Source of the DNA: Octopus sinensis
Taxonomy: Eukaryota
Direction: 5' to 3'
NCBI RefSeq assembly: GCF_006345805.1
Contig: NC_042999.1
Location: 17,484,001-17,548,000 of the forward strand
Length of the DNA: 64,000 nucleotides
The translations under genes and the position numbers were made by a program. How positions within the stretch are numbered: the first letter of the stretch is position 1; every line of letters begins with the position of its first letter. The notes beneath the pieces are model-generated. The model was not told the origin of the DNA. It did no database searches and saw only the letters and a list, made by a program, of their open reading frames with translations. This document shows positions 30,130 to 64,000 of the stretch, piece after piece.

Positions 30130-30938
30130 TATTTATTTACTATTGCCCACAGGGGGATAAGCATAGAAGGGACAAATAAGGACAGACAAAGGGATTAACT
30201 CGATTACATTGACAACAGTGCGTAAATGGTACTTATGTACTCGACCCCGAAATGATGAGAGGCAAATCGACCTGAGCGCTATTTGAGGTCAAAGGTAAAA
30301 CACGGAAAAAAATTCCTATTTCTTTACTACCCAGAAGGGGCTAAACACAGAGGGGACAAGCAAGGAGAGACAAACGGATTAAGTATATTATATCGACCCC
30401 AGTGCGTAACTGGTACTTATTTAATTGACCCCGAAAGGATGAAAGGCAAAGTCGACCTCGGCGGAATTTGAACTCAGAACGTAGTGGCAGACAAAATACC
30501 GCGTAGCATTTCGCCCGGCGTGCTAACGTTTTTTATTTCTTTATTGTCCACAAGGGCTAAACATAGAGGGGACAAACAAGGATACACAAAGAGATTAAGT
30601 CGATTACATCGACGGCAGTGCGTAGCTGGTACTTGATTTCTCGACCCCGAAAGATGAAAGGAAAAGTCGGCCTCGGCGGAATTTGAACTCAGAACGTAAC
30701 GCAGACGAAATACCTATTTCTTTACTACCCACAAGGGGCTAAACGCAGAGGAGACAAACAAACGGATTAAGTCGATTACATCGACCCCTGAGCGTAACTG
30801 GTGCTTAATTTATCGATTCCGAAAGGATGAAAGGCAAAGTCGACCTCAGCGCAATTTGAACTCTGAACGTAGCGGCAGATGAAATACCGCTAAGCATTTT
30901 GCCCGGTGTGCCAAATTTTGTGCCAGCTCACCGCCTTG
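30130..30938 (-). mobile_element. S3 SINE four-unit head-to-tail array
   Basis: Four tails; junctions at 30713/14 (AAATAG|GTATTTCG), about 30531 (AAATAA|AAACGTTAGC) and 30315/16 (degenerate). Confidence 0.88.
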
Positions 30939-32533
30939 TAATCGTCAGTTTATTAGTGCATGTTTAAACTATGTTAAATATAAAAAGTACATTCGATATA
31001 AAACACTGATCTTATAAGATTCAGCATGAAATCAAATAAGAACCGAGTGGCTCCATATTGCAACGTATTTATTTCATCTGTATACAATGAAGTTAACTAA
31101 GGAACTAGATGATCGGACATGTTGCGCGTTAGATACTGAATACCTTCCGTTGTTCACAGACTAACCTTATGTTAGACTTAATATGTCACACATTTTCAGA
31201 AGGTCACATGGCACGTTACATGAATTTAGCATACTCTGATGTGTTACAAGCATTTGAGATAGTTTCTAGAATGATTAGACAATCTTCCATCCTTTAATTA
31301 CTCTTGACATACGCATCGGTACTCATTTCTTCCTGGATTAAAGGAGAAAATAAATATTCTTTATAAAACAGGAGACACATATTAAAAAAATTATATAACT
31401 TAACTATAACTATAACTTATATATTATATCATAGATATAATATAAATATACAGCTGGTGAAAATGTTTTCTCTTGGTAAAAACTATATGCTATGTACAAT
31501 CACCGACGAATGCTCACGTTATTTATAGTGCACTACCAGTCATACGACCTAAGTTTTGCAGCAGTATCTCATTCTCTAGATGGCAGAAGTACATTGATTA
31601 ATTCTGGCTGATTTCATTCACCTACCACTCTTAAATCAACATTTTTGATTGCTAGATTTAGCACTTATTATTCCAACATGCATTCCATCCTAAACTTGTA
31701 AACTTCAGCAAATCCCTTCCGTCAAAGATTTCCATAAACTCGTCGTACATAAGTTTAAGTCATCCATCACCCACGTCAATCACTTCCAATATTGGTCTGC
31801 CTGGAATCGACAAAGTTATTGCCTGCCATCAGCTGTCTAATATATGAACAATATAAATTAAAGCTATTCAAAGTGAAAAGTTGCGTACTCATAGAGACCT
31901 TGTAAATCCATAATAAAACGGTTTCATCTAGCGTTGGCCCACACCACATAAATAACATAAATAGCCTCTGTTAATTACATCATTACAAAAGCTCTTCCGA
32001 AGAATGATTACAGCTGCATACAATTTTCTTTGCTCTTTTGTTTACGAGATAAATGATAGCAAACTTTAACTACTCGCGTGCAGTATAATTAATTTTATGG
32101 ATCAAGTTACTTTACCATAAATGTTTATTCTCATGAATAGTTCAATAAAAACAATACAATTATTCTCATTTACTTTATCGTTTTAGATTATCTCTCGATC
32201 ATTTAAACAATTTTTTAAAAGGTTTGAACTTCAGTATCAAAGTTGGCTGTCATCAGTATGAAGAAAAAATATCACCACTTTGAAGATTTAATTCATTTAA
32301 ATCCGGGTTGCATTGTAACCATCTTCAATGCCTATACGGTTAGAAAGAAAATTGAAGCGATTACTTTTATTTAAATACGTTATTGTTATTCGTAATGTAA
32401 ATGAATGTAAGCGCCATGAAATTCTAAATTTGCATCCGTTACTCGATCACGTTTACAGTAATATACTTTGCTAATGCCATTTCTTTAAATTTCGCATCGT
32501 ATATATCTTCCGAATCTGTATATTGTAAATACA

Positions 32534-32952
32534 AAGGCAGCGAGCTGGCAGAAACGTTAGTACGCCAGGCGAAATGCTTAGCGGCATTTCGTCTGCCGTT
32601 ACGTTCCGAGTTCAAATTCCGCCGAGTTCGACTTTGCCTTTCATCGTTTTGGAGGTCGATAAATTAAGTACCAGTTACGCACTGGGAACGATGTAAACGA
32701 CTTAATACCTATTTCTGTACATGTTTGTCCCATCTATGTTTAAACCCTTGTGGGTAATAAAGAAATAGGTATTTCATCTGCCGTTACGTTCTGAGTTCAA
32801 ATTCCGCCGAGGTCGACTTTGCCTTTCATCCTTTCGGAGGTCGATAAATTACGTACCAGTTACGCACTGGGGTCGATGTAATCGACTTAATCCGTATGTC
32901 TGTCCTTGTTTGTCCTCTCTGTGTTTAGTCCCTTGTGGGTTATAAATAAATA
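32534..32952 (+). mobile_element. S3 SINE dimer flanked by one TSD
   Basis: Junction AAATAG|GTATTTC at 32768/69; TSD GAATCTGTAT(A/G)TTGT(A/T)AATACA at 32512-32533 and 32953-32974 (20/22). Confidence 0.9.
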
Positions 32953-33418
32953 GAATCTGTATGTTGTTAATACAGAGTACACGCACACACACGCATACAC
33001 ATATTCACACACGTACGTACATATGTGTCCACATATACATATTCACACATACACACAGAGAGGCTGGAGTATAGTTGTTAAGATGCACGCATAGTAGCTA
33101 ATGGCTTGTACCAGGTAAAGATCGCGAAACGTAATAAATTCCAGTCTAGTATCGAATGTAGAAGTGCCACTGTTCTTATGATATGAGCTGTAATTCGAAA
33201 TCAATAATTGATAAACGTATTTCGAATTAATGCTCTTGCTTATGAAAAGAATGGAATAGTGCAATTCTATGAATGTCTATAGAATTCCGATGTTGAGATC
33301 TCTGTTTGAGCCTATACGCAGGTCTATACAAAATGCTTGGGTTCATCAGATATCATATCAACGAAGAAACGTAAGAAAAAAGCGAAAAAATGATAATGGG
33401 CATATCTAAGCAAAGTGG

Positions 33419-33717
33419 GTGGAGATATATGGCCTAGTGGTTAGAGCAGCGGACTCGCGGTCGAGTGTTCGCGGGTTCGAATCTCAAACGGGGCGATGTG
33501 TGTGTTTATGAGCGAAACACCTAAGCTCCAGGCGGCACCGACAGAAGGTAATGGCGAACTTCTACTGACTCTTTCGCCACAAATTTCTCTCACTCTTTCC
33601 TCCTGCATCTAGCTGCTCGCCTGCGACGGACCGGCGTCCCGTCCAGGTGGGGAACCTATACGCCAATGTAATCGGGAGACCTGCCCTTATGAGCCAGTCA
33701 TGGCTCAAGAAGGAACA
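33419..33717 (+). mobile_element. S1-related SINE, tail type 3
   Basis: S1-like head (TGGCCTAGTGGTTAG, GGTTCGAATC) and middle; tail GACGGACCGGCGTCCCGTCCAGG...ATGAGCCAGTCATGGCTCAAGAAGGAAC. Confidence 0.8.
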
Positions 33718-33892
33718 AAAAAAAAGCAAAAATAAAATATAGAAATTGGAAGTTTCGGTGAAGTTTATTCTTTCTCATATTAAATAAGGTCTTCTAACCA
33801 TATCGTTGAGTAGTGTTTTTAAAATGTGGTGCGAGAGTGAACTACATTAGGGGAGCAAAAATATTTAATAATTAGTTTTTATAACAGTGATT

Positions 33893-34143
33893 GTGTAGGC
33901 ACGTGGCTTAGTGGTTAGGGTATCATGATCGTCAGATTGTGGTTTCGATTCATCGACAGGGCGATGCGTTGTGTTCTTGAGCAAAACACTTCATTTCACG
34001 TTGCTCCAGTCCATTCAGCTGGCAAAGATGAGTAACGCTGCGATGGACTGGCGTCCCTTCCACCCGGGTAACGCATATGCCATAGAAACCAGAGAACCGG
34101 ACCCATGAGCCTGAATAGTCTTTAAAAGAGCACATTTATTTTA
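33893..34143 (+). mobile_element. tRNA-derived SINE with TGTGTTCTTGAGCAAAACACTT core, TSD-flanked
   Basis: A/B-box-like head; GATGGACTGGCGTCC segment shared with 33419; TSD TTTTTA(T/A)AACAGTGATT at 33876-33892 and 34144-34160 (16/17). Confidence 0.8.
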
Positions 34144-35486
34144 TTTTTAAAACAGTGATTAAAATGTTTTAGCATCAGTATTTCTTCAGCCAGGAGAACG
34201 AGAGAGGAATACCACCGTTTAATGTAGACTGGTATATGTAAGGAAAGGCTAATAACTTGGACCCACGAATATACTACATAATACACAATACATAAAAGAA
34301 CATTAAATACTACATAAAAAGACAAACAAAAGACAACAGTGCAGGCGAAGACCGTACAACATCAATACAAAACATTATATAAAAAAGTAACAATAGAAAA
34401 AGGTGTCGTGCAGCGTAATTTCACATGGGAGCTATGAAATGTGACATAAAGAGAATTGACATGCGGAGTGTAAGGAAATAGGTTGAATAAGACCTTTGCT
34501 TTATGACATTCTACGGTATTGAACATCAAAAGTAATGCCGTTACATTTTAAAGGATTTCATCGAAAATATGTTCTCCGATGAATACTTCTCTGGAGTAAA
34601 ATTTTACGTAAAGGAAAAAATAGTCAATTTTATGTTATTAGGTATATACAGGCTACAAGACGTATAGACATGTCTCTATTTTGTTCGAACCACAATAGGA
34701 ACAAATGAAATGCAATTCATACACGAACACTGAAGCTCATACAGAAAAGAACACGCTTACAAACAAACACACATTGTGTGTTAGAATAAATTGGTTTTAT
34801 TTAATTCCCACCAATACCCGCGTTTGGAAATGGGTTTCTCGATTTCCGTTGTGTTAAAAATGAAACAAAAACAAAAAATATAAAATAAAAACAAGCAAAT
34901 AAACGCAAAAAAAATTTTTTTTTTCTTTCCTTTGTTAAAATTGCCTGCACAACTTCATACAGTATTCAGATCTTGAATATCCAATGGCACATTCATATTC
35001 AATAGGAGTATTTTTGCCGACCAATCAAATTACGAATGCGTCTCCACATTGATCTTCGAATTATAATACTTCAGTCCTACCTTGGGAACATCGAATCATG
35101 CAAATTGCATTAATTTCCCTCATATGGAATATTTTTTTGATTCTTTGAAGAAGCAGTATATATTGTTTGTGGGTACATAACTATTAATTTACAATGCGGT
35201 AGTATGCATATAATTATAAGCTACCTTCGCTATCGATTCTTTCTCCCTTTTTATTCTTCAGAATCACAATTCGCTTTTATCATTGCAATACACTTTAGTT
35301 TACTTGCTGATAAATCATGAAAGCATATCTCGGTATTTTGCGAGCATAATAGACGCATTGTTATTTCTATGATAATTTTCTTAATATTCTTTGCCAATAA
35401 TTCGTTTGAAACATGAGTGAAAAGCTAAGGGGAACATTTAAAAACAGTAGCTTGATGTATATCTCTATACCTGCATGTGTATACAT

Positions 35487-35528
<42 letters not shown>

Positions 35529-35695
35529 ATATGTATATGCACACGGACACACCACACATACATATGTGCATATATAAATATGTGTGTGTGCTTCTGTGTG
35601 CAAGTGTATGTGTATCGTGTGCGTCTCACATCTTCTTCTATCGTTCTCTCTGTCTACAGACAAACATATATATATACCTACATGCATACATACGT

Positions 35696-35732
<37 letters not shown>

Positions 35733-36304
35733 CATTTATGTCTATACATGTATGTCTTTTTGTGTGTAATATGTATGTGTCAGTGTGTGTGCGTACATAT
35801 GTGTATGTGTATGCGTGTGTGTATGTGCGTGTGTAGATGTGCGTGTGTCTATGCGTGTGCGTATGAATTGTGGCTTGGGAAATCAATGACCTCGATTTTG
35901 TCCGATATGTCTTCTCCATTGAACCTGATGTTGTGTAATAATCATGTAAGAAATATTGATAAATAACGCTAGTGTTATCCTCTCTGCAGCGCATCTTGAT
36001 GTGGGTTAATTTTCTAAGGTTCTCTGGAGCCCTCAATGCATACAAGTAGTAATCGTTAGAGATTATCCGACGCAACCCAAGAAAATATTGTATTAATATT
36101 TCACTAATAAACGCGAACCTAAAAGAAGTAAAGCGATTGGCAAAAGGCCTCTTCATTCGGAAGGCATTGAGTAAAATGACTAAGAAATGATGGCTGTGGA
36201 ATTGACCTATTTATTTACTAACATGTAAGTCAAGTTAATTTTGAAACGGCTCAGTCCTGTTGTAAATCTTTCCCAAACTTGACACAATTGTTAATACAAA
36301 CACA

Positions 36305-36490
36305 CACGCACAATCACAGACACATATAGGACGAACGTTTTTCAATTTCCGTCCACCAATTCCACTCACAAGGCTTTGGTCGGCTCGTGGCTATAGTAGA
36401 AGACACTTGTCCAAGGTAACACGCAGTAGGCCCAAACCGGGAACCATATGGTATGGAAGCAAACTTATTACTATGCAGTCACGCCTGTGG
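36305..36490 (-). mobile_element. S2 SINE 5' half, diverged
   Basis: TTCCACTCACAAGGCTTTGGTCGG and CTATAGTAGAAGACACTTG motifs. Confidence 0.75.
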
Positions 36491-36492
36491 CA

Positions 36493-36543
<51 letters not shown>

Positions 36544-36879
36544 TGTGTGTGTATGTGTGTGGGTGCTGTGCACGTTCAGTATATTTGAAATCACTTGTGT
36601 ACGCTATTCTTCAATTCAAACGCCAATATTCATAGTCTCACCATCAATATTTCTACGATATCAAAGCCTCATCATCAGGATAACAAGTTGGTGTCTTGAC
36701 TTACGCAGTTTGGGGGACAAATGCAGAGATGTGCATCGAGTTATATTTACTGACCTGTAGATTTATATGTCACTAGAGGAGAACATTTTGTTTGTGAATT
36801 GTTTGCGTTGCTTGTATATTTATTTTCAAATTATACCCTGTTATTTGTCAATAATCATTTACGTTTAAGGCGATGTACT

Positions 36880-37082
36880 AGCAGGATCATGAGGGTGCCG
36901 GGTAAAATGCTTAGCGGTGTTTTGACCGTCTTTACGTTCTGCATTCAGATTTCGCCGAGATTGACTTTGGCTTTCAACATTTCTGGTTCTATAAAATAAA
37001 TGCCAGTCAAGCTCTGGAGTTGATACAATCGACTCTCCCTTCCCCTGTAATTCCTGGCCTATTGCCAAAATTTGAAAACCAA
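36880..37082 (+). mobile_element. S4 SINE, diverged
   Basis: AAATGCTTAGCGGT body and tail CTGGCCTATTGCCAAAATTTGAAAACC. Confidence 0.65.
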
Positions 37083-37652
37083 TGATTACCTAATTTTGTT
37101 TCTTCTAATGCATTGCTAACTAGATGCACGGTTCTGTGCTTTGAAAATGCTTCTTACCAATGGCATGGTAAAGTGTTGAAAATGCGTCGTAATTGTATGA
37201 CCAGCGTAAAAACTTCAGTAGTGAACTATAAAATTCTACGATTGCCACCGTCTATATAAACCAATCTTGTCATAAGTAGCTTGTTGGTAGATTGGCGTGC
37301 GTGTGAAGTAAAGATAAAAATAATTTATTTCAGTGTTTTACTCACATGAGAAGTAGATCCTCATTTGGCGCTATGAAGTTTCTATTTTCTTTTCATGTGT
37401 CCATCTCTCCTATGGTTAATGTTCATATGATGCATATAATTCAACTTACACTGTGTGTAATTTTTGTAACAGGACCAGTGTCTGCAGTATTATTCGTTGT
37501 ATATATGGCTGAGTTTAAAATTGTGAGTTGCCAAAATCGTAAGCATACCTGACAAAAGCTTTAGCGGCCTTTCAATTGAATTTATATTCCCAGTTCAAAT
37601 TCCGCCGTGAACGAATCTGCCTTTCGTCCCTTCTGGATCAATAAAAATGGGA

Positions 37653-38017
37653 TGGAAGCACTCCGTCGGTTACGACGACGAGGGTTCCGGTTGATCCGAA
37701 TCAACGGAACAGCCTGCTCGTGAAATTAACGTGTAAGTGGCTGAGCACTCCACAGACACGTGTACCCTTAACGTAGTTCTCGGGGATATTCAGCGTGACA
37801 CAGAGAGTGACAAGGCCGGCCCTTTGAAATACAGGTACAACAGAAACAGGAAGTAAGAGTGAGAGAAAGTTCTGGTGAAAGAGTACAGCAGGGATCACCA
37901 CCACTCCCCGCCGGAGCCTCGCGGAGCTTTAGGTGTTTTCGCTCAATAAACACTCTCAACGCCCGGTCTGGGAATCAAAACCGCGATCCTATGACCGCGA
38001 ATCCGCTGCCCTAACCA
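37653..38017 (-). mobile_element. S1 SINE tail type 1, slightly 5'-truncated, nested in an older S3/S4-like SINE
   Basis: Reverse complement of 5561-5950; host SINE halves at 37555-37650 and 38020-38110. Confidence 0.88.
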
Positions 38018-38385: not shown

Positions 38386-38422
38386 TTACATCTGCAATTC
38401 CATAGTATCCTTAGAGTTTATA

Positions 38423-41300: not shown

Positions 41301-41479
41301 ATAGTATATATATAAGGTGAGATGTTTTAAGCAAGTTTGCCTAAACTATGTGTAATCGCTTTGTTATTCTCCTGCTGTGTTTACCATACTTGGTCTGTGT
41401 CAAATAGTTCATGTTATCCACTTGCATTTCTTTCTTAGGTGAAATTGTCAAATATCTCCTGAAACAATCTAACTACCGG

Positions 41480-41700
41480 AATCGTTAGAACGCAGTACAA
41501 CATTTTTTGCGTCGTTTCGACTGTGTTTACGTTCTGAATTCCAGGTTCCGCCGAGGTAGAGTTTGTCTTTCATTCATTTCAGGGTTTATAAAACAGGTAC
41601 CAGGTGATAACTGCGGACGATGTCGTCGACTATCCCACTCCGCGAATTTGTTGCTCTTGAGTCAAAAGTTGAAAACAATATTCTATGTCTCTAAACCAAT
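41480..41700 (+). mobile_element. S4 SINE, diverged
   Basis: GAATCGTTAG, TACGTTCTGAATTCC and tail CTTGAGTCAAAAGTTGAAAAC. Confidence 0.55.
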
Positions 41701-41744: not shown

Positions 41745-41990
41745 AAGATGGCGGAAGGTTGTGAACTCTCAGGAACGTTTGCACGCCGGGCGAAATGTTT
41801 AGCGGCATTTCGTCTGTCTTTACCTTCTGAGTTTAAATTCCGCCGAGGTCAACTTTGCCTTTCATCCTTTCGGCGTCGATAAAGTAAGTACCAGTGACGC
41901 ACTAGGGTCGATATAATCGACTTAATCCGTTTGTCTGTCCTTGTTTGTCTCCTCTACGTTTAGCCTCTTGTGGGCAATAAAGAAATAAGA
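41745..41990 (+). mobile_element. S3 SINE
   Basis: Colinear with other S3 copies; ends GTGGGCAATAAAGAAATAAG. Confidence 0.88.
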
Positions 41991-43228: not shown

Positions 43229-43292
<64 letters not shown>

Positions 43293-43299
43293 GTATCTG

Positions 43300-43364
<65 letters not shown>

Positions 43365-43721
43365 ATGTATATATGTATTATGTATATGTATATATGTGTA
43401 TATGTAATATATGTATATATATATATATGTGTGTGTGAGTGTGTTGCATGTATGTGTGCGTATATACACTATATACACACGCGAACACAAAACACACATA
43501 TATACTTATATATCTTGTATACATATTTGTATGAATACATGCATATATGATATATATAAATATGTATTTATATAAATATTAGCATACGTATACACACACA
43601 CACAAGAATATATATATATATATATATATATTTTAGTATATATGTATATAGTATATATATATATATAATATATATATATATAGATATATATATATATAGT
43701 AATGTATATTTATATATATAC

Positions 43722-43762
<41 letters not shown>

Positions 43763-44899
43763 ATATATAATATTTACATGTATAAACATGTATTTATATT
43801 CTTTCGCGCATATACACACATATACAAATGCATTTATATAATTATAGACACAAATATAAGCAAGTGTGTACACACATGTGTGCATGTGAATGCTTTTATT
43901 TCATTTGATTTCATAGTGAATGAAAAACGACTGCCTTTAATGCTAGCTCATCATAGTGGCCCTGTGGTTATTATCGATTACTTTCGTTTATTTACTAATT
44001 TATTTTCCTTTCCCGTGCAGACTATAATTAAAATTCTAAAAGGAAATTGCATTGAAGTGCAGGTTATCAGGTTATGTCAATTTTGTCCAAAAACGAAAGC
44101 TTGTAATTGATACATTGCTCAAACCACAACATTATAGTTATACGTGATGAGATGTCGATAGCTATAAGGAAACGTGTATTTGCTATAAAGTAACACAGTT
44201 TCACAAATATATTTAACTCTTTTATTTTATTTGTAATTTATAAGAATGTATTTTATATCTATAATTCATTACTGACTGCACTGTCCGTAATACTTCCGCT
44301 GTTGCAGACTTATTAATCTGCCATGCAAGAAGGCATTACTGTAGCAATTTTCTACACGTGGTCAATTAGAGAAGAACAAACGCGAAATGTTAAGACAATC
44401 AATGATGTCAATGGCGTAAACGTTTCATTTAACTGGTGATCCTATTTTCACTAACATAATTCTTAGTTCGAAATTGCTGAGTATTTAATGGAGCTAAACA
44501 AATTTCAAAACCGAAGCACTAATGACATCATTGTGTCAGAGTACTTACACTAAAGGTCTAATGCGTGGCAAAGTGAAACAAATTTTCGCCTGTATTTTCC
44601 TTTCAACTGTGACTATGAACGCTCGGTTTACGCTTCCTAATCTCATCACCTACAGAAAAATCAGTGATTAAGAATTTGTTTTCACGCTAAACGTTCAGAG
44701 CCTCTGTTGCTGATGAAGTGAACGTTGAATTAATTTATTGATTTCACTTTTATCTTTGGTGCGGATTATAATCTACTTCTAGGATGTTTAGGCAAAAAGT
44801 TTTCACGACTTTACTTCAAAATGCCGAAGATCTTCAAATATTCCGTAGTATGTGTTCATTTGTGTTTATCAGGCTATCGCTGTTGTTTCAATGTGTAAT

Positions 44900-53249: not shown

Positions 53250-55948
53250 TACTCCGCAAATATAACATCACAGAAAAGCGCTTCTTTGAACAAAACAAAC
53301 AGTTCAACTCCAACCCCAAAAAGTTCTACCAAGAACTAGGCAAAAATAAAACAGAAATCACTACAGCACCAACAGCAGAAGAAGCGGAAGAATTCTGGAG
53401 AGAAATATGGTCGGCGAACGAAAAACCAAAAAAAAAAAAAATATTAAAACAACAAACTCAGCATCTGAGCAACTTTGGACCCCCATAACAACTGAAGAGG
53501 TCACCCAGGCACTGCAAAGACTAAGCAACTGGAAGGCACCTGGGAATGACAAGATCCCCAAATTCTGGTTGAAATATCGAACAGGAATGCACAAAAAGCT
53601 GGCTGAAAACTTTAACAACATACTAGCAGAGCCAGAGACAATACCTGAATGGCTCCCGAAGGGGAAAACCATCTTAATTCCCAAATCAAATGAGACAGCA
53701 AAACCAGAAAACTGCAGACCAATAACCTGTCTCCCTAAAATGTACAGGGCATTTACTTCAGTGATATCGCAAAAGTTGAACAAGCACTTGGACGAAAACA
53801 ACCTGTTTCCAGAAGAGCAGAAAGGATGCCGCAAAGGCTCATATGGCTGAAAAGATCAACTAATGTTTAATAAAGCCATAACTGAAGACAGCCACAGAAA
53901 GAAGATAGGCCTCAGTATGGCCTGGATCGACTACAAAAAGGCGTTTGATAGCATCCCCCACACATGGATCCTCGAAACACTAGCCATTAACAAAGTACCA
54001 TCAACAATTATAAAATTCATAGGGCACTCTATGAACAAATGGCAAACAGTGCTACACCTCCAAACAAAAGAGGGACTCATGAAAACCAAAGCCATCCCCA
54101 TTAGAAGAGGAATATTCCAGGGAGACACGCTCTCTCCACACCTTTTTCTGCTTTGAACAGTCACCTCTATCTGATATGCTAAATAGAACTGGATGCGGAT
54201 ATAAATGTTACGGCAAAACGATCAGCCACCTTTTATATATGGATGACCTAAAACTATACGCTGCAAATGACAAACAGCTGGAAACACTATTAAAGACAGT
54301 TCATGGATTTACCAAAGAAATAGATATGAAATTTGGATTAGAAAAGATGCGCCAAAGTAACCCAGAAAAGAAGAAAACTAGTTAAGAGTAGCAACATCAC
54401 ACTAGATAAAACCAATGAAATGAAAGAACTAGACCAAAGCCAAACTTACAAATACTTAGGAATCCATGAACTAGATAAGACACAACACACACAAATGAAA
54501 GAGAAAATAAAGAAAGAATATTATAGACGAGTTAGATCAATGCTAAAAACAAGATAATAGGTTTTAATACTTTAGCTGTCCCAGTTATAAGTTACAGCTA
54601 CAATATCCTAAATGAACTGACCAAAATAGATAGGAAAACAAGAAAAATTATGGCAGGATCTAGGATGCATCACCCATAATCTGACATAGAAAGACTATAT
54701 ATACAACGTATAGAAGGTGGTAGAGGCCTTATACAGCTGGAAAACTACTATAAAATAACCAGCATAGGATTGCAAAAATATCTACTTCAGAAGGAAGGAA
54801 AACTGATACAAATAGCGGCAAAACACGAGCAAAACAAAAAACTGTTCTCAGTAATTTAGGAAGCTGAAAAATACAAACAAGAAATCATACTACCTAATAA
54901 ATATGAAGAAGAAGAAGAAGAAGAAGAAGAAGAAGAAGAAGAAGAAGAAGAAGAAGAAGAAGAAGAAGAAGAAGAAGAAGAAGAAGAAGAAGAAGAAGAA
55001 GAAGAAGATAAAGAAACAACAAAAGCTATAGAACAAATGAAATCCAAACTAAAAATAGAACAGCAACGAACCATGTTAAAACGATGGCAAGAAAAGCCCC
55101 TTCATGGTAAATACTGGACTAAACTAAACGCAAAATAAATAGACAAAGAAAAATCCCAGCAATGGTTAAGAAGCTCAGAACTCAAAGCAGAGACAGAGGG
55201 ATGTTTAATTGCAGCACAAGACCAAAGCCTCCCCACCAGAAATTACCAAAACCATGTAAAGAAAAGAAATATAACACGTAACTGCAGAATATGTGGAGAT
55301 GGACAAGAAACAATAACTCATATTATCTCTGGCTGCCCAGTCCTGGCTAAGAAGGAATATATTCACAGACATGAAAGAGTTGGAACCTACATACACTGGA
55401 CGCTATGCCAACATTATGGAATAACAACAGAAAAAAGATGGTATAGGCCCACACCAGAAAAGGTCACAGAAAACGAGAAAACAACCATACTCTGGGATAT
55501 GCCGATACACACAGATAGAGAAATTAAGGTCAACAGACCAGATATAGTTGTCAGAGATCATGGAGTAAAAAATACTTTCTAATTGATGTATCAATACCGG
55601 CAGATGACAACGTGTCTCTAAAAGAAATGAAGAAACTCTCAAAATACAAAGATATGGAAATAGAGGTAACCAGAATGTGGAATCTAAAAACAGAAACAAT
55701 TCCTATCATAGTAGGTGCATTAGGCATGATAAAAAAATATTCAGACAAATACATAACAAAAACGCTAGGAATTACAAACACATATAACATACAGAAAATT
55801 TCACTACTAGGCACTGCACACATCCTACGCAGAACACCTTCCATACAATAACCATCAGAGCATCACAACAAATCACAGCACATACCCAAGGCACACAGAG
55901 CTGCGCTCGGTAGTGAAGTGAAAGCACGCTATAATAATAAAACTACTG
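53246..55948 (+). pseudogene. R4/Dong-clade RLE LINE, 2.7-kb 5'-truncated copy (RT, CCHC, RLE, 3' UTR)
   Basis: RT motifs WKAPGNDKI, CRPITCL, EEQKGCR, WIDYKKAFDSIPH, RRGIFQGDTLSP, LLYMDDLKLY, YKYLG; then CRICG..HIISGC and RPDIVV; several stops and frameshifts; (AAT)n on both sides. Confidence 0.95.
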
Positions 55949-56054: not shown

Positions 56055-56110
<56 letters not shown>

Positions 56111-56128
56111 ATATATATATATCAGGCT

Positions 56129-56505
56129 CAGGAGTGGCCGTGTGTTAAGTAGCTTCCATACCAACCACGTCGTACCACAGCGTGGCACATTGGACGAGTT
56201 TCTTCTACTATAGCCTCTTGAGTGGATATCGTGGACGGAAACTGAAAGACGTCCGTCGTATATATATATATATATTTTTTTTTTTCTATGTATGTGTGTA
56301 TGTATATGTTTGTGTGTCTGTGATTGTCCCCACCATCGCTTGAAAACCGATGCTGGTGTGTTTGTGCAGTAAGGTAGCGGCTCGTCAAATAAGACCAATT
56401 AAATAATTAATAGCCTTGCAAAGGAAAGTCCTGGGGACCGATTTGTTCTACCAGAGGCGGTGCTCCCGCATGGCCGCAGTCAAATGCCTGAAAAAATATA
56501 AGAAT
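56129..56505 (+). mobile_element. S2 SINE, diverged
   Basis: CAGGAGTGGCCGTGTG head, internal TA/TG repeat, tail CATGGCCGCAGTCAAATG. Confidence 0.85.
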
Positions 56506-56747
56506 ATACTTTCACATATGTATATATAATGTTATATACTTATATATGTGTTGGTGTTTTGCATGTTGAGATAATTATTATTGTTGTTGTTGCTGTCGTC
56601 GTCTACAATAGCCAATCTTTGTGAGTGGATTTGGTTGACGGAACCGGAACGGAACCCTTTGTATAGACCTATATATTTCTGTGTGCTTTGTTCCTCTGCT
56701 TTTCCCCTCCTCGGTTACATTTTGACAGTCGTTATTGTTGTGTTTAC

Positions 56748-57141
56748 GTGGAGGCGCAATGGCCCAGTGGTTAGGGCAGCGGACTCGCGGTCATAGCATC
56801 GTGGTTTCGATTCCCAGACCGGGCGTTGTGAGTGTTTATTGAGCGAAAACACTTAAAAGCTCCACGAGGCTCCGGTAGGGGATTGTGGTGATCCCTGCTC
56901 TACTCTTTCACCACAACTTTCTCTCACTCTTACTTCCTGTTTCTGTTGTACCTGTATTTCAAAGGGTCGGCCCCTTGTCACTCCCTGTGTCACGCTGAAT
57001 ATCCCCGAGAACTACGTTAAGGGTACACGTGTCTGTAGAGTGCTCAGCCACTTACACGTTAATTTCACGAGCAGCAGGCTGTTCCGTTGATTCGGATCAA
57101 CCGGAACCCTCGTCGTCGTAACCGACGGAGTGCTTCCATCA
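56748..57141 (+). mobile_element. S1 SINE tail type 1, full length with TSD
   Basis: 12-bp TSD TGTTGTGTTTAC at 56736-56747 and 57142-57153. Confidence 0.92.
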
Positions 57142-57864
57142 TGTTGTGTTTACACCCCTGTAATGACTAAAACGTCCCTGAAGTAGGTACTACAGCATGT
57201 CCGCAGACAAATGACCGAAACATATAAAAGCATACAAGCATATAGAGACATACATGAAAGTATTTAATATTTTATAATTATACTCTATCTGTAATATGTG
57301 CGTGTGTTTAGGAATGAATGAATGTTGATTAGCAGTCTTTATACTTGTAATTTACTTCTTCAAATGCAAAATTCAACATTGTATTATGTTGATGATTAAA
57401 TCACATCAAACACTAATGTTTTCATATTACATGACCTCCATATCGATCTCTTAGATTTAGTAAAATTCGTTAGTTGCAAATTTTCCGCAGATCGTTGGAA
57501 TACTAACGGCTTCATTTGAGATTGCCTAAAACTCAAAGATCTGTTCAGATTTATATCCATGCTTTGCAATCTACTAAATACAAAATATTTTTAATTATAT
57601 TTCCAGCAGACATATGAGTCAAAAACGTAAACGTCTTATGTAATAATAAGCCAAGATATATCACAATGGCGGAAGGAAATTGAAATAGAATGCTCGGATA
57701 GAGCTCTCCTACTGAAAGTTTGCCAGTTAGGGAAAACAAGGATTACCAGGAGGGTCTAAAGGCTGCCGAAAACGTGTGAATACCGGTAGAAACCCGCTAC
57801 CCACATATATCCTACCAGGAATAAGACCAAACCAGAGCTTTGATTCAAGTCTCAATATACACCC

Positions 57865-57956
<92 letters not shown>

Positions 57957-57960
<4 letters not shown>

Positions 57961-58060
57961 AAAAAATGAAGTTCGAAATGCTGCTGTATTATACAATTTT
58001 TATTTTTATATATACATTATAACATGTTTCAGTTCCTGAAATGAACCTTATCAAAAAAAG
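57957..58060 (-). mobile_element. ~100-bp fragment between (TA)n arrays with a decayed HHR-like core
   Basis: Minus strand TTGATAA-GGTTC-atttcag-GAACT-GAA-ACATGT-T: stem II and palindromic stem III retained, core mutated. Confidence 0.4.
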
Positions 58061-58167
<107 letters not shown>

Positions 58168-59438
58168 ATATATCTATATATATATATATGTATCTATCTA
58201 TCTATCTATCACTCTATCTATCTATACACACAGAAATACACACACAAGCACAAACATACACTAATCAAAAGAAGAAGACAAAGAACATACTTTAACTCAA
58301 TTATATACCAATAATAATTAAATAGATGTACATATCTAAATTATCATGAACAACTAAAATAATTATAGATTAAAATTTAACCATCTATAGTTATATAGAA
58401 TACAATAATATTTCTTAAACAAAAAGTTATAAGTCTTCTTGGGGGTTAAATGGCAGTATCATCGTTTCTTAACAGAAAGGCATATTTAAGTGACCATAAG
58501 AAATACGTTTTGGTTTAAATACTGTTTCGATCTAGAACAGAGATTTTCTAACGAACTATACATGCATGTCCATATGCACATATACGTCTTCACATGCAAG
58601 TGAACATTAATATGTATTTATTACAAAATGCAATACATTTTTCTTAGTAGTCACAGGGTATACTGTTCAAAAAGTAGAGAGTCGCACATTTGAACCACAC
58701 AACGTTTCGATAACTCAAGAATCATTCTCTTAACTATGTTATAATGCCAATTTCCTAATCGTGCATCGAACTTCACTATTTTTCGAGACATTGTTACTCG
58801 AAAAGAAATCATGCATGAAGTGTTTATGTGTGAAATTATAGTCAATATTTGAAGTCAGATTTTGAGCCTTAGACAACACAGAATTATATAATTTATTGTC
58901 GTTTATAAACTTCAAACACTAGATGATACGTCCTTGAATTCTTATTTTCAGGCTTCAGTAAGAGTTGTGTCAGAAAGAGTTGATAAAATTTCCAGTACAC
59001 AACAGGGAAGTAGACACGACGTCAAATGAAATTGCGTACCCCGTAAGCACGTTACTGAATGCTACTTCCACATCCGAGACAGGTGTCATTGCATTTACAG
59101 ACCAAGATATTGATGATCTATTCTCAAAAGAACTAATGCCTCATACGGATATGCATTCACTCACCACCTCTATATACCGGATGTACTGCTTTTACAAATT
59201 TCAGTTCAATAATTATTAAAAGTGTTTCTTTAGATCATTGCAAAGTAAAAGCATACAGTGATGTCCAACTAACACACATGACGTCTTTCATTAATTGGCA
59301 ATTCGCCATTCAACTGGGCGAATATGATAGAAATGTTGATACGATTGTTGGGCAACCAGATTGCAGACGAATGTAGAATGAATTCGACTACAATGCTAGT
59401 CCACGCTAAACGGTTATTTCGGAGAATTCAGAAGAGAG

Positions 59439-59596
59439 TATTCTGTTGTGTGTGGGAAGAGTGTCATTTTCTTTTTATGCCTTATAATGTAACACACGCA
59501 CCGGTAAAAATTCCACTTAAGTGTAAATTTTACCGGTGAGTGTGTTACATTATAAGGCAAAAAAAGAAAATGACTCTCCCCAGACGCAACAGAATA
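59439..59596. repeat. 158-bp loopless palindrome centred on TTAA
   Basis: Arms 59439-59518 and 59519-59596, about 7 mismatches and a 2-nt indel; TA at both ends. Confidence 0.88.
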
Positions 59597-59778
59597 TGAT
59601 TTATCACACTAACTCATATAAAGAATCTTGCAAACCATATCCAAAAGCGAAAGAAGAGAAGTAATTTTTCACTTATCTGGCAGATTTTAAGCATGGCAAA
59701 TAGTATAGCACAATGGATATGAGAGAAATGAGGAAGTACACAGCTCGTAATCTAGATAATGACTATAACTAACTTGCA

Positions 59779-60173
59779 TTCTGTAAGGGGTCCCTGGTCA
59801 GGGAATTCCAGCCTCTTTGAGAAGTATGAAATCACTTCTTAGCCACAATTCTTCTTAAGTTTAACTAGTTAATTAGCATGTCATTTAATTGCCTCCGGAA
59901 CAAGGCTGTTGACAGACGCCGAAGAGGCCTCAGAGCGGCTGAGACCCTTCAGCCATTTAGATACTCATCTAAGATTAGGCAACTCCATAGAAATCTTTCA
60001 TCCTGTTACCTACTGATCTCGTGGGACACGTTGCCATAGACCAAAAGAAGTTTGAAGGTCGAGAGAATGGGATTAGCTCTGCAGAAATAATATAATAATA
60101 CATTCCGGACACTTTCTATGGTAATTTATTAAGCGTTTAGATATAAGGCTAATGGAGTAAAACCCCTACAGAA
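59779..60173. mobile_element. ~395-bp element bounded by TTCTGTA(A)GGGGT inverted termini (solo LTR or MITE)
   Basis: TGTAAGGGG at 59782 and CCCCTACA ending at 60170; no TSD recognised. Confidence 0.35.
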
Positions 60174-61754
60174 AACCCCGAGGAAGAGACTCTAAGCCAG
60201 ATATGTAAAATTATTCTCAACCAATATTTGACATCTGTTGCCGCTTCATGGATGCTGCCAGCATATTCGCTCGTCCTTCCTACGTGACGCATTGCAAAAA
60301 ATTAAGAAAAAATACATTGAACATTATGGTGTCTGCTTTAAGATAAACGGCAAGGGATGGAACGCTTTTCATCATATGTTTGCTTTACGTAAGACTACTT
60401 GTAGCAACACATCGATAGTAAACAGATTTCCGAAACCATTAATTTCAGCATTCTGGTATTTGACATTGTAGCAGCTGAATGCTTAAACAATCTCTGAATT
60501 GCATTTTTTCTTGGTTTTACTTATTCGCTTTTGTTCTCAAGTAAATTTACGATATTGTTTTGAGCGTTGCTGTAAGTATTTTGCTTTCTAACCGTTTGTC
60601 TCTAAACTGTTTGCATTTTTAATGTGTCATTTGTTTCTCTCAGGATTACATTAACAATCCAATATTATTATCGGAATTCCATTGTTCATGCAGCTGTATG
60701 CTACAATCATCTCTACAACTTGCGGCTAATTGATGCCAAAACTGTACTTTTCCTCCATTATTTAGCTGCATGCATTTACAAAATGTTTTAGCAAATGCTA
60801 GAATTCAACAAAATCGTATGATATATTGAATAAAAAAGTGTTTCTGTTATTATTCAATGCATTATATTACAATCATTCTTTTTACTGTTATTGTCTATTC
60901 CTTGCTACAATTATTTAATATCGTACTAATACTACCTGTGCAATATTGGATACAGATGTATAATATCGATCTCTTTGTGACGAATGAATACGAATACGTT
61001 TTCGATATTTGTAATGATACAATCATTATCATTTCACACACAGAAAATAAATTAATTAGTTAATCGGAGGTCAATACAAAGATAAACATTTCTAATAACC
61101 TGCACAAACGAAAGAACAAATATACATTTATTCATCAATGCCTGGTTTTCCTTTACTTTTCATACCAAAGAAACAATTTAAAAGTCTACATTTACCGTAG
61201 AGAGGTTTCATCAAGAGAGATTTCAGCCACGAATAAACCCATTCATATTTCAACTTTTGTACATCAATAGTTACATTATCTGAAGTGTTCTGATATTTTT
61301 CAAGATTGTAAGGAACGATATTACAGTCATTTTGCTGTTACACGCTCTCTTTAATAGGCTATTCACAAACATGAGACATAATAGATTCCAGAAGGTCGTT
61401 TACTAGATGAGGGCTTCACAAACGGGAAATATGTCACAATATCTTTAACATGATAAATATAATATTATCAATAACATACCGAATTTGAAAATGAAGATAT
61501 TTTCCAACGTAATCAACATTATTACAACGCTTTAAACAATGTGTGCCTACATTATCAACCAAACTTTGGAAAATGTGAGTGAAATTTCCATCGTATCGGT
61601 ATTCACTGCTGCATTCAAGATTGTAAAGGGTAGTTCTGGGCAGGTTAGACTCCGATTCTGAGTACGGATTGTTTTTTTCATAACAATTGTCTCTAAATCT
61701 ATAAGCACAATTTAAAAAAAATCTGTCTTTCTACAACATGCGCAATTCATGAAA

Positions 61755-62407
61755 TTTAGGTGATTAGTCCTCGACTTCAGTGCTCAAGTGGTACTTATTA
61801 TATCGACCATGAAAGGCTGAAAATTAAAGTGAACCTTGGACATTTGAATTCAGAACCTAAGGACAGACAAAATGGCGCATATATTTTCTCGCAAATCATT
61901 TTCTCTGGCCTGCTAACCATTGTGTCAGCTCGCCGGCGTACAATTTCATAAATAACAGCAATTCCTTACAAACTAAAATAATTTAATATATATGTTTTTA
62001 CTATCCATAAGGGCCTAAACACAGAGGGGCCAACCACGGACAGACAAACGGATTAAGTCATTTACATCGATCCCAGTGCGTATCTGGTACTTAATTTATC
62101 GATCCCGAAAGGATGAAAGGCAAAGTCAACCTCGGCGGAATTTGAACTCAGAACGCAACGGCAGACGAAATACCTATTTATTTACTACCCACAAGGGGCT
62201 AAACACAGAGGGGACAAACAAGGACAGACAAACGGATTAAGTCGTTTACATCGACCCCAGTGCGTAACTGGTACTTAATTTATCGACTCCGAAAGGATAA
62301 AAGGCAAAGTCAACCTCGGCGGAATTTGAACTCAGAACGTAACGTCAGACGAAATACGGCTACGCATTTCGCCCGGCGTGCTAACGTTTCTGTCAGCTCG
62401 CCGCCTT
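61755..62407 (-). mobile_element. S3 SINE dimer (about 61990-62407) plus an older diverged S3/S4 copy (61755-61935)
   Basis: Dimer junction AAATAG|GTATTTCGTCTG at 62174/73. Confidence 0.88.
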
Positions 62408-63594
62408 AAAGAAAAACACATTTTAATATAACAAGTATGAAATCACAAGTTAACGCGAAAATATTCTTACCTACAATGATAGGAAAAGTTGAGATGACAT
62501 AAGCTATTCCTTTCGATATTTCTAAACTGACATATATGCCTGGACCAAATTCGTTAAAATTGCTAATAACCGTTTGATGTCTTATGAAATAAAATGCTAT
62601 TTATTACTATTTGAATTACTCTTAACAATATATAATAAATTTGAAAATAGGATATATTCGACGTGAAATACAATACAATAGCATAAACGTCTCCCTAACA
62701 GATGAAGATTAATCTCAACTGATATTAAATTTTATTCCTAGATTGTCATGAAAGTGTATAACCACCGACCGTTGGTAATTATTCCGGATACATACAGTAG
62801 ATAACTCATAGTTTAATATTATATTCAATCTTTTAAATATATACTAATCAATTTCGGTTGCATAAATGTCATTCATTATAAATATCAACCATTTATATAT
62901 AAACCGCTCCCAGTCGACTTACTAGATATATCGGGCAAATGTCCAGCCCATTATCAACTTCAATGGAAATATAATAGATGTGTACTTGTGAATTCACAGT
63001 TTTTAAAACATATTGCATAAGAGTATTGGCTGGAATGCCTTTGATCGTTTTCTGTTCCATTAGATTTCATATGAGGCTAAACAAGTGCAACAAACAGAAA
63101 CAGTGCAAGGACCGGTCTTATGTGATGTAACTTTTTTTTACTATATACCTTCAATTTAACGGTCAATGAATTCGTACGAAATGCCAATATTTTATGCTAG
63201 ACCAGTATAATGTATTTTTAACATTGGCGATGTCGATCATAGATAATTTTTGTTTTAAAACTGTGTATAAAATACAAATTCAACAAGTAATTATTTTCGT
63301 TTTTATATATTAACAAAATTATATTTGCTGCTTTATTAGGGTTCGAATACAAATGCATGTTCCGGGGTAGCAACTGCGGACATTTTCGCTTTGCAAGCCT
63401 TCCTATATCATAAATATCTTTTGCAGTAAGGAAGCAATGCGTTGGGATCCAAAATAAATAATGGAATATAAGCTAAACTATTACACTTTTCACCTATGTA
63501 TTTGTATATGTGTCAATGGTGTTTATGTTGAGAGAAGATACGTCATTTCCATTTATTACTCGTTGGTGTCTTACAAAGTGAACATGTTTCAACG

Positions 63595-64000
63595 CGGCGA
63601 GCTGGCAGAAACGTTAGCAAGTCGGGCGAAATGGTTACCAGTATTTCGTCTGCCGTTACGCTCTGAGTTCATGTTCCGCCGAGGTCGACTTTACCATTCA
63701 TCCTCTCGGGATCGATAAATTAAGTACCAGTTGCACACTGAGGTCGATATAATCGACTTAATCCGTTTGTCTGTCCTTGTTTGTCACCCATATGTTTAGC
63801 CCTTGTGGGTAGTAAAGAAATAGAAATAGCTATTTCGTCTGTTGTTACGTTCTGGGTTCAAATTCCGCCGAGGTCGACTTTGCCTTTCATCCTTTCGGGC
63901 TCGATTAAATAAGTACCAGTAATGCACTGGGGTCGATATAATCGACTTAATCCGTTTGTCTCCTCTATGTTTAGTCCCTTGTGGGCAATAAAGAAATAAG
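63595..64000 (+). mobile_element. S3 SINE dimer (runs to the window end)
   Basis: Junction AAATAGAAATAG|CTATTTCGTCTG at 63829/30. Confidence 0.88.

What the first reader, a model, noticed from the sequence alone, without database searches (positions are those of the whole stretch)
30130..64000. S3 SINE concatemers repeatedly join at the same nucleotide (AAATAG|GTATTTCG)
Seen: four separate loci show tail-to-body junctions at the same position: 30713/14, 32768/69, 62174/73 and 63829/30, with a degenerate fifth at 30315/16 and one exception near 30531. The repeated unit is ~185 bp. The dimer at 32534-32952 is bracketed by a single 22-bp TSD. The join falls at the 3' edge of the loop of the head hairpin CGAAATGC-ttagcg-GTATTTCG, and the tail GAAATA restores that stem (GAAATA-gg-TATTTC). 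Inference: a circular or rolling-template intermediate, site-specific self-insertion, or a multimeric master element. Random truncation would not give fixed junctions.
Basis: partly seen in the sequence, partly recalled or inferred. Interest (0 to 1): 0.72.

Follow-up and report, generated by a model that had tools for sequence, protein, structure and literature searches.

The report
Dimeric form of an octopus SINE
A short mobile element in this probably octopus genome often occurs as a one-and-three-quarter copy always joined at the same base; most likely the doubled form copies itself as one piece, which is a known and fairly ordinary kind of element.

Summary
The ~235-bp S3 SINE occurs in this window as 5 single copies, one randomly 5'-truncated copy and 5 doubled copies. 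The four-unit array at 30138-30937 is two doubled copies in a row. In all 5 doubled copies the complete tail (..AAAGAAATAG) is followed by consensus base 51 (GTATTTCG). This point lies just 3' of the 4-nt loop of a 13-bp head hairpin.

Target-site duplications flank whole arrays: 32536-32953 clearly, 30138-30937 well, 61991-62407 weakly. None is visible at the internal joints. The doubled element was therefore inserted as one piece. No regular array has more than two units, and left and right units differ systematically in their 3' parts. This excludes self-insertion and argues against a rolling or circular template.

The best reading is a dimeric SINE form. It would have been founded once or a few times by a reverse-transcriptase template switch and then amplified from dimeric source genes. 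Some rare variants are shared within a dimer, and the left units are not one clade. De novo re-creation of the joint at a structural hot spot therefore remains possible (about 0.3).

A genome-wide test could not be run because no octopus DNA is reachable with these tools. Interest is low to moderate.

The parts
30714..30937 (-). Array A1, dimer X, left unit: full S3 copy (consensus 1-235) with tail GGGTAGTAAAGAAATAG
   Evidence: BLAST (query 1-235, 80%); alignment
30534..30713 (-). Dimer X, right unit: starts at consensus 51 (GTATTTCG), tail type b (GGACAATAAAGAAATAA)
30316..30533 (-).
30138..30315 (-). Dimer Y, right unit: degenerate. It starts at consensus ~51 (GAATTTTT) and has a type b tail. 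It is 21% diverged from the consensus against 5% for its left partner.
30939..30954 (-). 5' copy of the TSD flanking the whole four-unit array (AATAAACTGACGATTA)
   Evidence: 14/16 match to 30118-30133, shuffle p = 0.01
30118..30133 (-). 3' copy of that TSD (AATAAATTGATGATTA)
32536..32768 (+). Array A2, left unit (full copy)
32769..32953 (+). Array A2, right unit (consensus 51 to tail)
   Evidence: TRF period 185
32513..32535 (+). 5' TSD copy of dimer A2 (AATCTGTATATTGTAAATACAAA)
   Evidence: 22/25 aligned bases identical, 0 of 500 shuffles as good
32954..32976 (+). 3' TSD copy of dimer A2 (AATCTGTATGTTGTTAATACAGA)
32566..32595 (+). Head hairpin in A2 left unit: 13-bp stem and loop TAGC. The second unit of every dimer starts at the first or second base of the 3' arm (32583/32584 in this copy).
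   Evidence: strand folding (-16 kcal/mol, z = -3.15); sequence
62174..62407 (-). Array A3, left unit (full copy; head-loop haplotype GCGTAGCC shared with monomers M1 and M4)
61991..62173 (-). Array A3, right unit (consensus 51 to a degraded tail)
   Evidence: TRF period 184
62404..62430 (-). Putative 5' TSD copy of dimer A3 (weak)
   Evidence: 19/27 match to 61964-61990, shuffle p = 0.05
61964..61990 (-). Putative 3' TSD copy of dimer A3 (weak)
63591..63829 (+). Array A4, left unit (full copy, tail repeat doubled: AAATAGAAATAG)
63830..64000 (+). Array A4, right unit (starts CTATTTCG, type b tail). The window ends at its tail, so a third unit cannot be excluded.
6388..6622 (+). Monomer M1
   Evidence: 88%
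8025..8255 (+). Monomer M2
16813..17047 (+). Monomer M3 with a 16-nt TSD (15/16)
23426..23658 (-). Monomer M4
41755..41988 (+). Monomer M5: divergent head, type b tail
12295..12446 (+). Solo copy 5'-truncated at consensus ~65 with its own 17-18-nt TSD. This is an ordinary random truncation, not a solo 'second unit'.
   Evidence: TSD p = 0.004

Best explanation
S3 is a LINE-dependent SINE with a tRNA-like head, a central domain shared with other SINE families here, and a 3' part ending ..GCCCCTTGTGGGTAGTAAAGAAATAG. It exists in a monomeric form and a dimeric form. The dimer is head-body-tail followed directly by a second body-tail that lacks the first 50 nt, including the A-box region.

Shown: the doubled element is put into the genome as one piece, because TSDs flank whole arrays. 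The joint is the same in all five dimers. Neither the monomer nor the dimer consensus contains a TTTT pol III terminator. A transcript started from the left unit's promoter can therefore run through to the right unit's tail, which is where the partner LINE's reverse transcriptase starts.

Inferred: the joint arose at the RNA/cDNA level. A reverse transcriptase copying one S3 RNA left it at the apex of the 13-bp head hairpin and resumed at the normal start site in the tail of a second S3 RNA.

Inferred: this happened once or a few times, and the product became one or a few dimeric source genes. The identical junction at separate loci is then mainly inherited rather than re-made at each insertion.
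For: Same junction in 5 of 5 dimers, always with the complete AAATAG tail variant and no filler bases.

TSDs flank whole arrays: A2 22/25 (0 of 500 shuffles), A1 14/16 (p = 0.01), A3 19/27 (p = 0.05). No severed S3 head lies upstream of any left unit.

Every regular array has exactly two units. Five monomers, five dimers and no longer array has P = 0.024 under an open-ended geometric process.

Left and right units are not interchangeable. All 5 left units carry the tail GGGTA(G/A)TAAAG, like monomers M1-M4. Three of 5 right units carry GGGCAATAAAGAAATAA(G). Right units are about twice as far from the family consensus in the 3' part: 38/295 against 43/621 differences, p = 0.004; without A1y p = 0.037.

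There is no TTTT in the monomer or dimer consensus. A B-box-like GAGTTCAAATTCC lies at position 75 and an A-box-like motif at position 13.

Dimeric SINEs that amplify as units, and SINEs with long internal duplications, are established (PMC10702118 discussion; PMC4758252 introduction). Template switching by LINE reverse transcriptase is the accepted origin of chimeric retrocopies (PMC5729268).
Against: No left-unit clade and no right-unit clade appears in a neighbour-joining tree; it is star-like with low bootstrap values.

Left units fall into two head-loop haplotypes that are also found among monomers. A3_L has GCGTAGCC, as do M1 and M4. The others have GCTTAGCG.

Two dimers share private variants between their own left and right units. 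In A2 these are the insertion CGG[A]GGTCG and a T>A change. In A3 they are GGT[T]GAC and GTAA[A]. Only 5 of 120 permutations of partners reach the observed rarity-weighted sharing. The right-unit tails of these two dimers are not type b.

This pattern fits several independent origins, or gene conversion, better than one old master. Only five dimers were available, and no dimeric source gene or transcript has been seen.
Confidence: 0.55

Rival explanations
1. The joint is re-made at many insertions. S3 RNA is cut in the 4-nt loop of the head hairpin, or the reverse transcriptase falls off at its apex. The enzyme then jumps to the tail of a second S3 RNA. Each dimer would be a fresh two-template product made from monomeric source genes.
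For: The joint sits exactly at the loop/3'-arm boundary of the strongest local structure. Rare variants are shared within dimers A2, A3 and A1y; 5 of 120 partner permutations reach the observed sharing. Left units belong to different monomer head haplotypes. The irregular X/Y joint (tail to position ~19) lies inside an array flanked by a single TSD, which suggests the enzyme can switch onto S3 tails. A 43-bp tail-module array at 12577-12765 restarts at about the same head position.
Against: No solo copy starts at 50/51; the only truncated copy starts at ~65 and has its own TSD. There are no regular trimers. The joint is uniform, with no filler bases and always the same tail variant, whereas free 3' ends vary: AAATAG, AAATA, AAATAAG, AAA. 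The consistent polarity, type a tail on the left and type b on the right in 3 of 5 dimers, and the distinct 3' parts of right units need an extra assumption. Gene conversion between adjacent units could account for the shared variants.
Confidence: 0.28
2. The duplication happened after insertion. Monomers inserted first, and each locus later duplicated bases 51-235 by slippage or unequal crossing-over.
For: TSDs around the whole array are also expected under this model. Shared private variants within A2 and A3 would follow naturally.
Against: The right boundary of the duplication would have to coincide with the last base of the element at five independent loci, and the left boundary with base 51. 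There is no usable homology between the tail end and the flanks. Microhomology between the tail and the head loop predicts AAATAGCGGTATTT or AAAGAAATGCTTAGCGG, which are not seen. Left-right divergence within dimers (mean 15%) is no lower than between dimers (16%).
Confidence: 0.05
3. A circular ~185-nt RNA or DNA, or a pseudo-circle held by tail/51-57 pairing, is copied more than once round (rolling template).
For: The unit is defined end to end as tail|51. The tail GAAAUA can pair with UAUUUC at 52-57; the whole 31-nt junction segment folds at -7.3 kcal/mol. Circular LINE products exist in yeast (PMC3510499).
Against: The left unit always carries the 50-nt head, which a 185-nt circle would lack. 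No array exceeds two regular units. Left and right units differ in linked tail markers in 3 of 5 dimers and in overall 3'-part divergence, so they were not copied from one template. The competing head hairpin is far more stable (-16 kcal/mol).
Confidence: 0.03
4. Site-specific self-insertion: a new S3 copy is targeted to base 50/51 of a resident copy.
For: The position is fixed, and the near-palindrome GAAATA-GG-TATTTC could in principle be a nuclease target.
Against: This model predicts resident head(1-50) + new copy + TSD + resident 51-235. Instead, unique DNA and the outer TSD lie directly upstream of the left unit's head, and no TSD is visible at the internal joint.
Confidence: 0.02

Closest known systems
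Dimeric and trimeric SINEs that amplify as one unit (primate Alu; tRNA-derived dimers and trimers such as the colugo CYN elements), as summarised in PMC10702118 (discussion) and PMC4758252 (introduction)
   Same: Two related SINE units are joined head to tail at an invariant junction. They are transcribed from the left unit's promoter, inserted as one piece and flanked by a single TSD. They coexist with monomers.
   Different: Here the right unit is a 5'-truncated copy of the same element (bases 51-235). It keeps the B-box region and lacks the A-box region. It is not a second complete small-RNA-derived monomer. Descent from a dimeric source gene is inferred, not shown.
SINE-derived tandem repeats and 'SINEs bearing extended internal duplications' in squamate reptiles (Vassetzky et al. 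2023, PMC10702118)
   Same: The architecture is the same: tandem repeats of part of a SINE, with a longer terminal unit that reaches the SINE terminus. In both cases the repeats arise repeatedly from abundant tRNA-related SINEs.
   Different: Squamate arrays reach up to 1000 units, homogenise and favour subtelomeres. Here every regular array has two units, the arrays are dispersed, and TSDs show that they moved by retrotransposition.
Tandem multimers of full-length Dip/B1 SINEs in the Gobi jerboa (cited in PMC10702118)
   Same: A high fraction of copies lies in head-to-tail multimers (about half here: 5 dimers against 5 monomers).
   Different: Those multimers are made of full-length units and reach up to eight. 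Here the second unit is always truncated at the same base.
Template-switch chimeric retrocopies (U6-L1 chimeras; PittSINE from TguSINE1 plus tRNA-Asp, PMC5729268)
   Same: The proposed origin of the joint is the same. The LINE reverse transcriptase leaves one RNA and continues on the 3' end of another, giving an acceptor with an intact 3' end joined to a 5'-truncated donor, all inside one TSD.
   Different: In such chimeras the donor breakpoint usually varies between copies; this rests on my own knowledge of the U6-L1 literature. Here it is fixed, and donor and acceptor belong to the same SINE family.
Octopus SINE families OK, OR1 and OR2 (Ohshima and Okada 1994, cited in PMC4758252 and PMC4824008)
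   Same: tRNA-related SINEs of octopus. S3 may be one of them or a relative.
   Different: No reference sequence was available, so identity is untested. A different SINE in this window carries CTTGGGCAAGTGTCTTCT. From memory this motif resembles the CORE domain attributed to OR1/OR2. S3 lacks it.

Membership tests
LINE-dependent SINE | Short, non-coding, dispersed in many diverged copies | tested here: met
   Sixteen units of ~185-235 bp at 10 loci, 80-88% identical to the query. The only ORFs are short and spurious.
LINE-dependent SINE | Head derived from a pol III small RNA, with A and B boxes | tested here: inconclusive
   B-box-like GAGTTCAAATTCC lies at position 75 and a weak A-box-like TGGCAGAAACG at position 13. 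ARAGORN and Rfam report no tRNA. The head folds as a long hairpin, not a cloverleaf.
LINE-dependent SINE | Variable-length target-site duplications and occasional random 5' truncation | tested here: met
   TSDs of 12-25 nt for M3, M4, P12295, A1 and A2. The truncated copy starts at consensus ~65.
LINE-dependent SINE | 3' end shared with a partner LINE | not testable with these tools
   The tail motif occurs only in S3 copies and in one 43-bp array. The LINE fragment at 28728-29590 has a different 3' end. No octopus genome was reachable.
Dimeric SINE amplifying as a unit | The same junction in all copies | tested here: met
   Five of 5 second units start at consensus 50/51 after a complete tail.
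Dimeric SINE amplifying as a unit | A single TSD around the whole dimer and none at the joint | tested here: met
   A2 22/25, A1 14/16, A3 19/27 (weak). A4 is cut by the window end.
Dimeric SINE amplifying as a unit | Readable by pol III end to end (no internal terminator) | tested here: met
   No run of four or more T in the monomer consensus or the 418-nt dimer consensus.
Dimeric SINE amplifying as a unit | Copies descend from dimeric source genes (left-specific and right-specific diagnostic sites) | tested here: inconclusive
   Right units differ from left units and monomers in the 3' part (p = 0.004, or 0.037 without A1y), and 3 of 5 right units have a type b tail. Against this, the tree is star-like, left units carry two head haplotypes, and some rare variants are shared within dimers (5 of 120 permutations).
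SINE-derived satellite (sSat) | Arrays of many tandem units, homogenised | tested here: not met
   At most two regular units per array. Units within an array are 9-27% diverged from each other.
SINE-derived satellite (sSat) | A longer terminal unit reaching the SINE terminus | tested here: met
   The left unit carries the extra 50-nt head.
Rolling-circle or circular-template product | Open-ended unit number, with units of one array copied from one template | tested here: not met
   P = 0.024 for the observed monomer/dimer/longer counts under a geometric model. Left and right tail haplotypes differ in 3 of 5 dimers.
Nested (self-)insertion | An internal TSD and an interrupted host copy | tested here: not met
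   There is no head fragment upstream of left units, and the outer TSD abuts the head.
CORE-SINE superfamily (OR1/OR2) | Conserved ~65-bp CORE domain | not testable with these tools
   No reference sequence is held, and the text search for S3 strings found nothing. The lead from memory points to another SINE in the window, not to S3.

The most novel reading that the evidence does not exclude
The junction is a true hot spot. S3 RNA would be cleaved in, or the reverse transcriptase released at, the loop of the 13-bp head hairpin, and the enzyme would re-initiate on the tail of a second S3 RNA in a large share of insertions. Dimers would then arise again and again from monomeric sources. This would be a structure-guided, high-frequency route from a dispersed SINE to tandem repeats.
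Probability: 0.25. Interest if true: 0.6.

Novelty: new member of a known kind. Interest (0 to 1): 0.3.

Why it matters
SINEs make up about 11.6% of an octopus genome (PMC13282606), and about half of the S3 loci in this window are dimers. A repeat library that holds only the monomer will split these loci and miscount insertions and their ages.

If the joint is inherited, this is one more dimeric SINE, of interest mainly for annotation and for subfamily dating in cephalopods. If the joint is re-made at a hairpin apex, it would give a concrete, testable mechanism for how SINEs seed tandem repeats. The squamate work (PMC10702118) left that question open.

Tried and rejected
1. Genome-wide sampling could not be done.
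   - A 20-mer from the S3 core found nothing in metagenome contigs.
   - It found only three matches, all in bacterial or archaeal genomes and taken to be chance, in genome contigs.
   - A SINE-encoded ORF hit only one UniRef entry, from Octopus bimaculoides, with no contig on record.
   - The LINE ORF's only close relatives lie on ~1-kb contigs.
2. A literature search for S3 sequence strings gave nothing. No paper on octopus SINE dimers was found.
3. 12295-12446 is not a solo 'second unit' starting at 51. The apparent match to positions 51-64 is the 5' copy of its own TSD, and the copy starts at ~65.
4. The joint is not the head/LINE-derived module boundary. Other SINE families in the window share S3 positions ~1-165 and diverge only after that, so base 51 is inside the shared region.
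5. The joint is not explained by microhomology. Pairing through GAAAT or TAG predicts joints that are not observed.
6. The LINE fragment at 28728-29240 is not the partner, because its 3' end differs.
7. The right unit's B-box remnant shows no relaxed constraint: 4.2% divergence against 6.7%, not significant.
8. The neighbour-joining clade A1x_L + A4_R (89% bootstrap) is an artefact of overlapping independent deletions.


Full report
**What the window is.** The window is AT-rich eukaryotic DNA packed with microsatellites and short repeats. It has no tRNA gene and no Rfam family. An ORF on the minus strand of the element under study has one database relative, a 56-aa 'uncharacterized protein' of Octopus bimaculoides. 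The source is therefore probably an octopus. LINE reverse-transcriptase fragments lie at 28728-29240 and 53407-53850.

**The element.** BLAST of the copy at 32534-32768 against the window finds the following:
- five full or nearly full single copies: 6388-6622, 8025-8255, 16813-17047, 23426-23658 (minus strand) and 41755-41988;
- one truncated copy at 12295-12446;
- four arrays.

The 234-nt consensus has three parts:
- a tRNA-like head, with an A-box-like motif at position 13 and a B-box-like GAGTTCAAATTCC at position 75;
- a central domain;
- a 3' part ending GTTTAGCCCCTTGTGGGTAGTAAAGAAATAG.

Other SINE families in the window share positions ~1-165 and then carry a different 3' end. Base 51 is therefore inside the shared head/central region and is not a module boundary. 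Single copies have variable TSDs, and the truncated copy starts at ~65 with its own TSD. This is ordinary LINE-mediated behaviour.

**Checking the observation.**
- At 30713/14, 32768/69 and 62174/73 a complete tail AAATAG is followed by GTATTTC(G/A).
- At 63829/30 the tail repeat is doubled and the next base is C.
- At 30315/16 the second unit is degenerate.

TRF reports periods of 185 and 184. The chance that four further second units start within one base of the first is about 3e-8.

The array at 30138-30937 is not a tetramer of regular units. It is a dimer (full unit plus 51-start unit) followed by a second dimer whose left unit is truncated at ~19. This matches TRF's period of 388. So there are five dimers, five monomers and no regular array longer than two. 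The last array is cut by the window end.

**Where the joint falls.** The head forms a 13-bp hairpin, CGGGCGAAAUGCU-UAGC-GGUAUUUCGUCUG (-16 kcal/mol, z = -3.15). The loop is consensus 46-49, and the second unit begins at G51, or at G50 if the last G of the tail is counted as head. The joint is therefore at the apex, at the loop/3'-arm boundary.

**How the dimers got into the genome.** Local alignment of flanks gives one TSD around each whole array:
- 32536-32953: 22 of 25 bases, and none of 500 shuffles as good;
- the four-unit array: 14 of 16, p = 0.01;
- 61991-62407: a weak 19 of 27, p = 0.05.

Unique DNA, not a severed S3 head, lies upstream of each left unit. This rules out insertion of one copy into base 50/51 of another. 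It also makes duplication after insertion unlikely, because the duplicated segment would have to end at the exact last base of the element five times.

The dimer is a single retrotransposition product. Its consensus contains no TTTT. A pol III transcript started in the left unit could therefore reach the right unit's tail.

**One origin or many?** This is the question that decides the interest, and 64 kb cannot settle it.

Evidence for inheritance from dimeric source genes:
- The joint is uniform. It always has the AAATAG tail variant and no filler, although free 3' ends vary.
- Arrays stop at two units (P = 0.024 under a geometric model).
- Left and right units are not equivalent. All left units have the tail GGGTA(G/A)TAAAG, as most monomers do. 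Three of five right units have GGGCAATAAAGAAATAA(G).
- Right units are about twice as far from the consensus in the 3' part: 38/295 against 43/621, p = 0.004; without the degenerate unit p = 0.037.

Evidence for repeated formation:
- The tree of units is star-like, with neither a left clade nor a right clade.
- The left unit at 62174-62407 shares the two-site head-loop haplotype GCGTAGCC with monomers M1 and M4. The other left units have GCTTAGCG.
- Two dimers share private variants between their own halves, including a 1-nt insertion in both units of 32536-32953. Only 5 of 120 permutations of left-right partners reach the observed rarity-weighted sharing.
- Mean left-right distance within dimers (15%) is not clearly lower than between dimers (16%; 11 of 120 permutations).

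Gene conversion between adjacent units could produce the shared variants. So could a few independent foundings.

**Mechanism.** I commit to the following, with the steps marked.
1. Shown: dimers insert as units by target-primed reverse transcription.
2. Inferred: the joint arose when the partner LINE's reverse transcriptase left one S3 RNA at the hairpin apex. It may have fallen off there, or the RNA may have been cut in the loop. It then resumed at the normal initiation site in the tail of a second S3 RNA. Template switching of this kind is the accepted origin of chimeric retrocopies and new SINEs (PMC5729268).
3. Supporting this, an irregular tail-to-position-19 joint lies inside a four-unit array bounded by one TSD. 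This is most simply a template switch, although insertion into the tail of a resident dimer is not excluded.
4. Inferred: the product became one or a few transcribed dimeric source genes that then amplified.

I put 0.55 on this and 0.28 on de novo formation at most insertions. A rolling or circular template is unlikely (0.03). The left unit always carries the head that a 185-nt circle would lack, arrays stop at two units, and the two halves usually differ in linked markers.

**Comparison with what is known.** Dimeric SINEs that amplify as units (Alu, tRNA-derived dimers and trimers) are well known. So are SINE multimers and 'SINEs bearing extended internal duplications', which grade into SINE-derived satellites with a longer terminal unit (PMC10702118; PMC4758252). 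The S3 dimer has that architecture.

It differs from Alu-type dimers in that the right unit is a 5'-truncated copy of the same element. It differs from squamate SINE-derived satellites in having only two units and in moving by retrotransposition.

Its relation to the published octopus SINEs OK, OR1 and OR2 could not be tested. I found no paper describing dimers of an octopus SINE. Curated repeat libraries were not available to me, so it may already be catalogued.

**Verdict.** The feature is real and non-random. It is a new member of a known kind, with a small open question about whether the hairpin-apex joint is a hot spot. Interest 0.3.

Noticed in passing
window 12577-12765 (-), with its start near 12790: A 43-bp unit repeated 4.3 times. 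Each unit is the S3 type b tail module (TAGCCCCTTGTGGGCAATAAGAAAATAAG) plus AACAATGCTTTTTC. The array begins with an S3-head-like fragment, GCAGTAACGTTAGCGC. Each tail is thus followed by a restart near head position 17-20, the same place as the irregular joint at 30531-30534.
   Followed up: partly
window 30138-30533 (-): The two halves of one dimer differ greatly in apparent age. Non-CpG divergence from the consensus is 5.0% in the left unit and 20.9% in the right (p = 3e-5). The excess is concentrated in the first ~50 nt of the right unit (20/48).
   Followed up: partly
window 28728-29240 (+), extending to ~29590: C-terminal part of a LINE ORF2 (zf-RVT domain). Its closest relatives are 93% (a Logan contig) and 78% (an NCBI contig); 50-60% relatives occur in corals and a sea cucumber. 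Its 3' end runs into (AAT)n and lacks the S3 tail, so it is not the S3 partner.
   Followed up: partly
window 53407-53850 (+): N-terminal fragment of a reverse-transcriptase ORF (weak RVT_1 match, below Pfam's cut-off).
   Followed up: no
window 7220-7363, 29702-29915, 36870-37078, ~41479-41680 (all +); 61700-61940 (-): At least one further SINE family with the same tRNA-like head and central domain as S3 but a different 3' end (..TTGCCAAAATTTGAAAC). None of these copies is dimeric in this window.
   Followed up: partly
window 5230, 14437, 22950, 36398, 38751, 40559: Six copies of another SINE type carrying CTTGGGCAAGTGTCTTCT. From memory this resembles the CORE domain, and this family, rather than S3, may be the published OR1/OR2 type.
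   Followed up: no
window 30714-30937 (-) and 63830-64000 (+): Two unrelated units carry overlapping deletions between the direct repeats TTTGTC...TTTGTC of the 3' part. This looks like recurrent slippage, and it created a false 89% bootstrap clade.
   Followed up: yes
minus strand of any S3 body, e.g. window 30283-30471: The S3 body carries a ~50-60-aa ORF (..LFLYYPQGAKHRGDKQG..DLGGI). UniProt entry A0A0L8H450 of Octopus bimaculoides is this ORF, so it is a spurious gene model on a SINE.
   Followed up: yes
window 15098-15518, 27622-27886, 43229-43799, 57867-58209 and many others: Very dense microsatellites: 92 TRF rows in 64 kb, including (TAG)140, (ATA)88 and (AT)286. Several abut SINE tails.
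   Followed up: no
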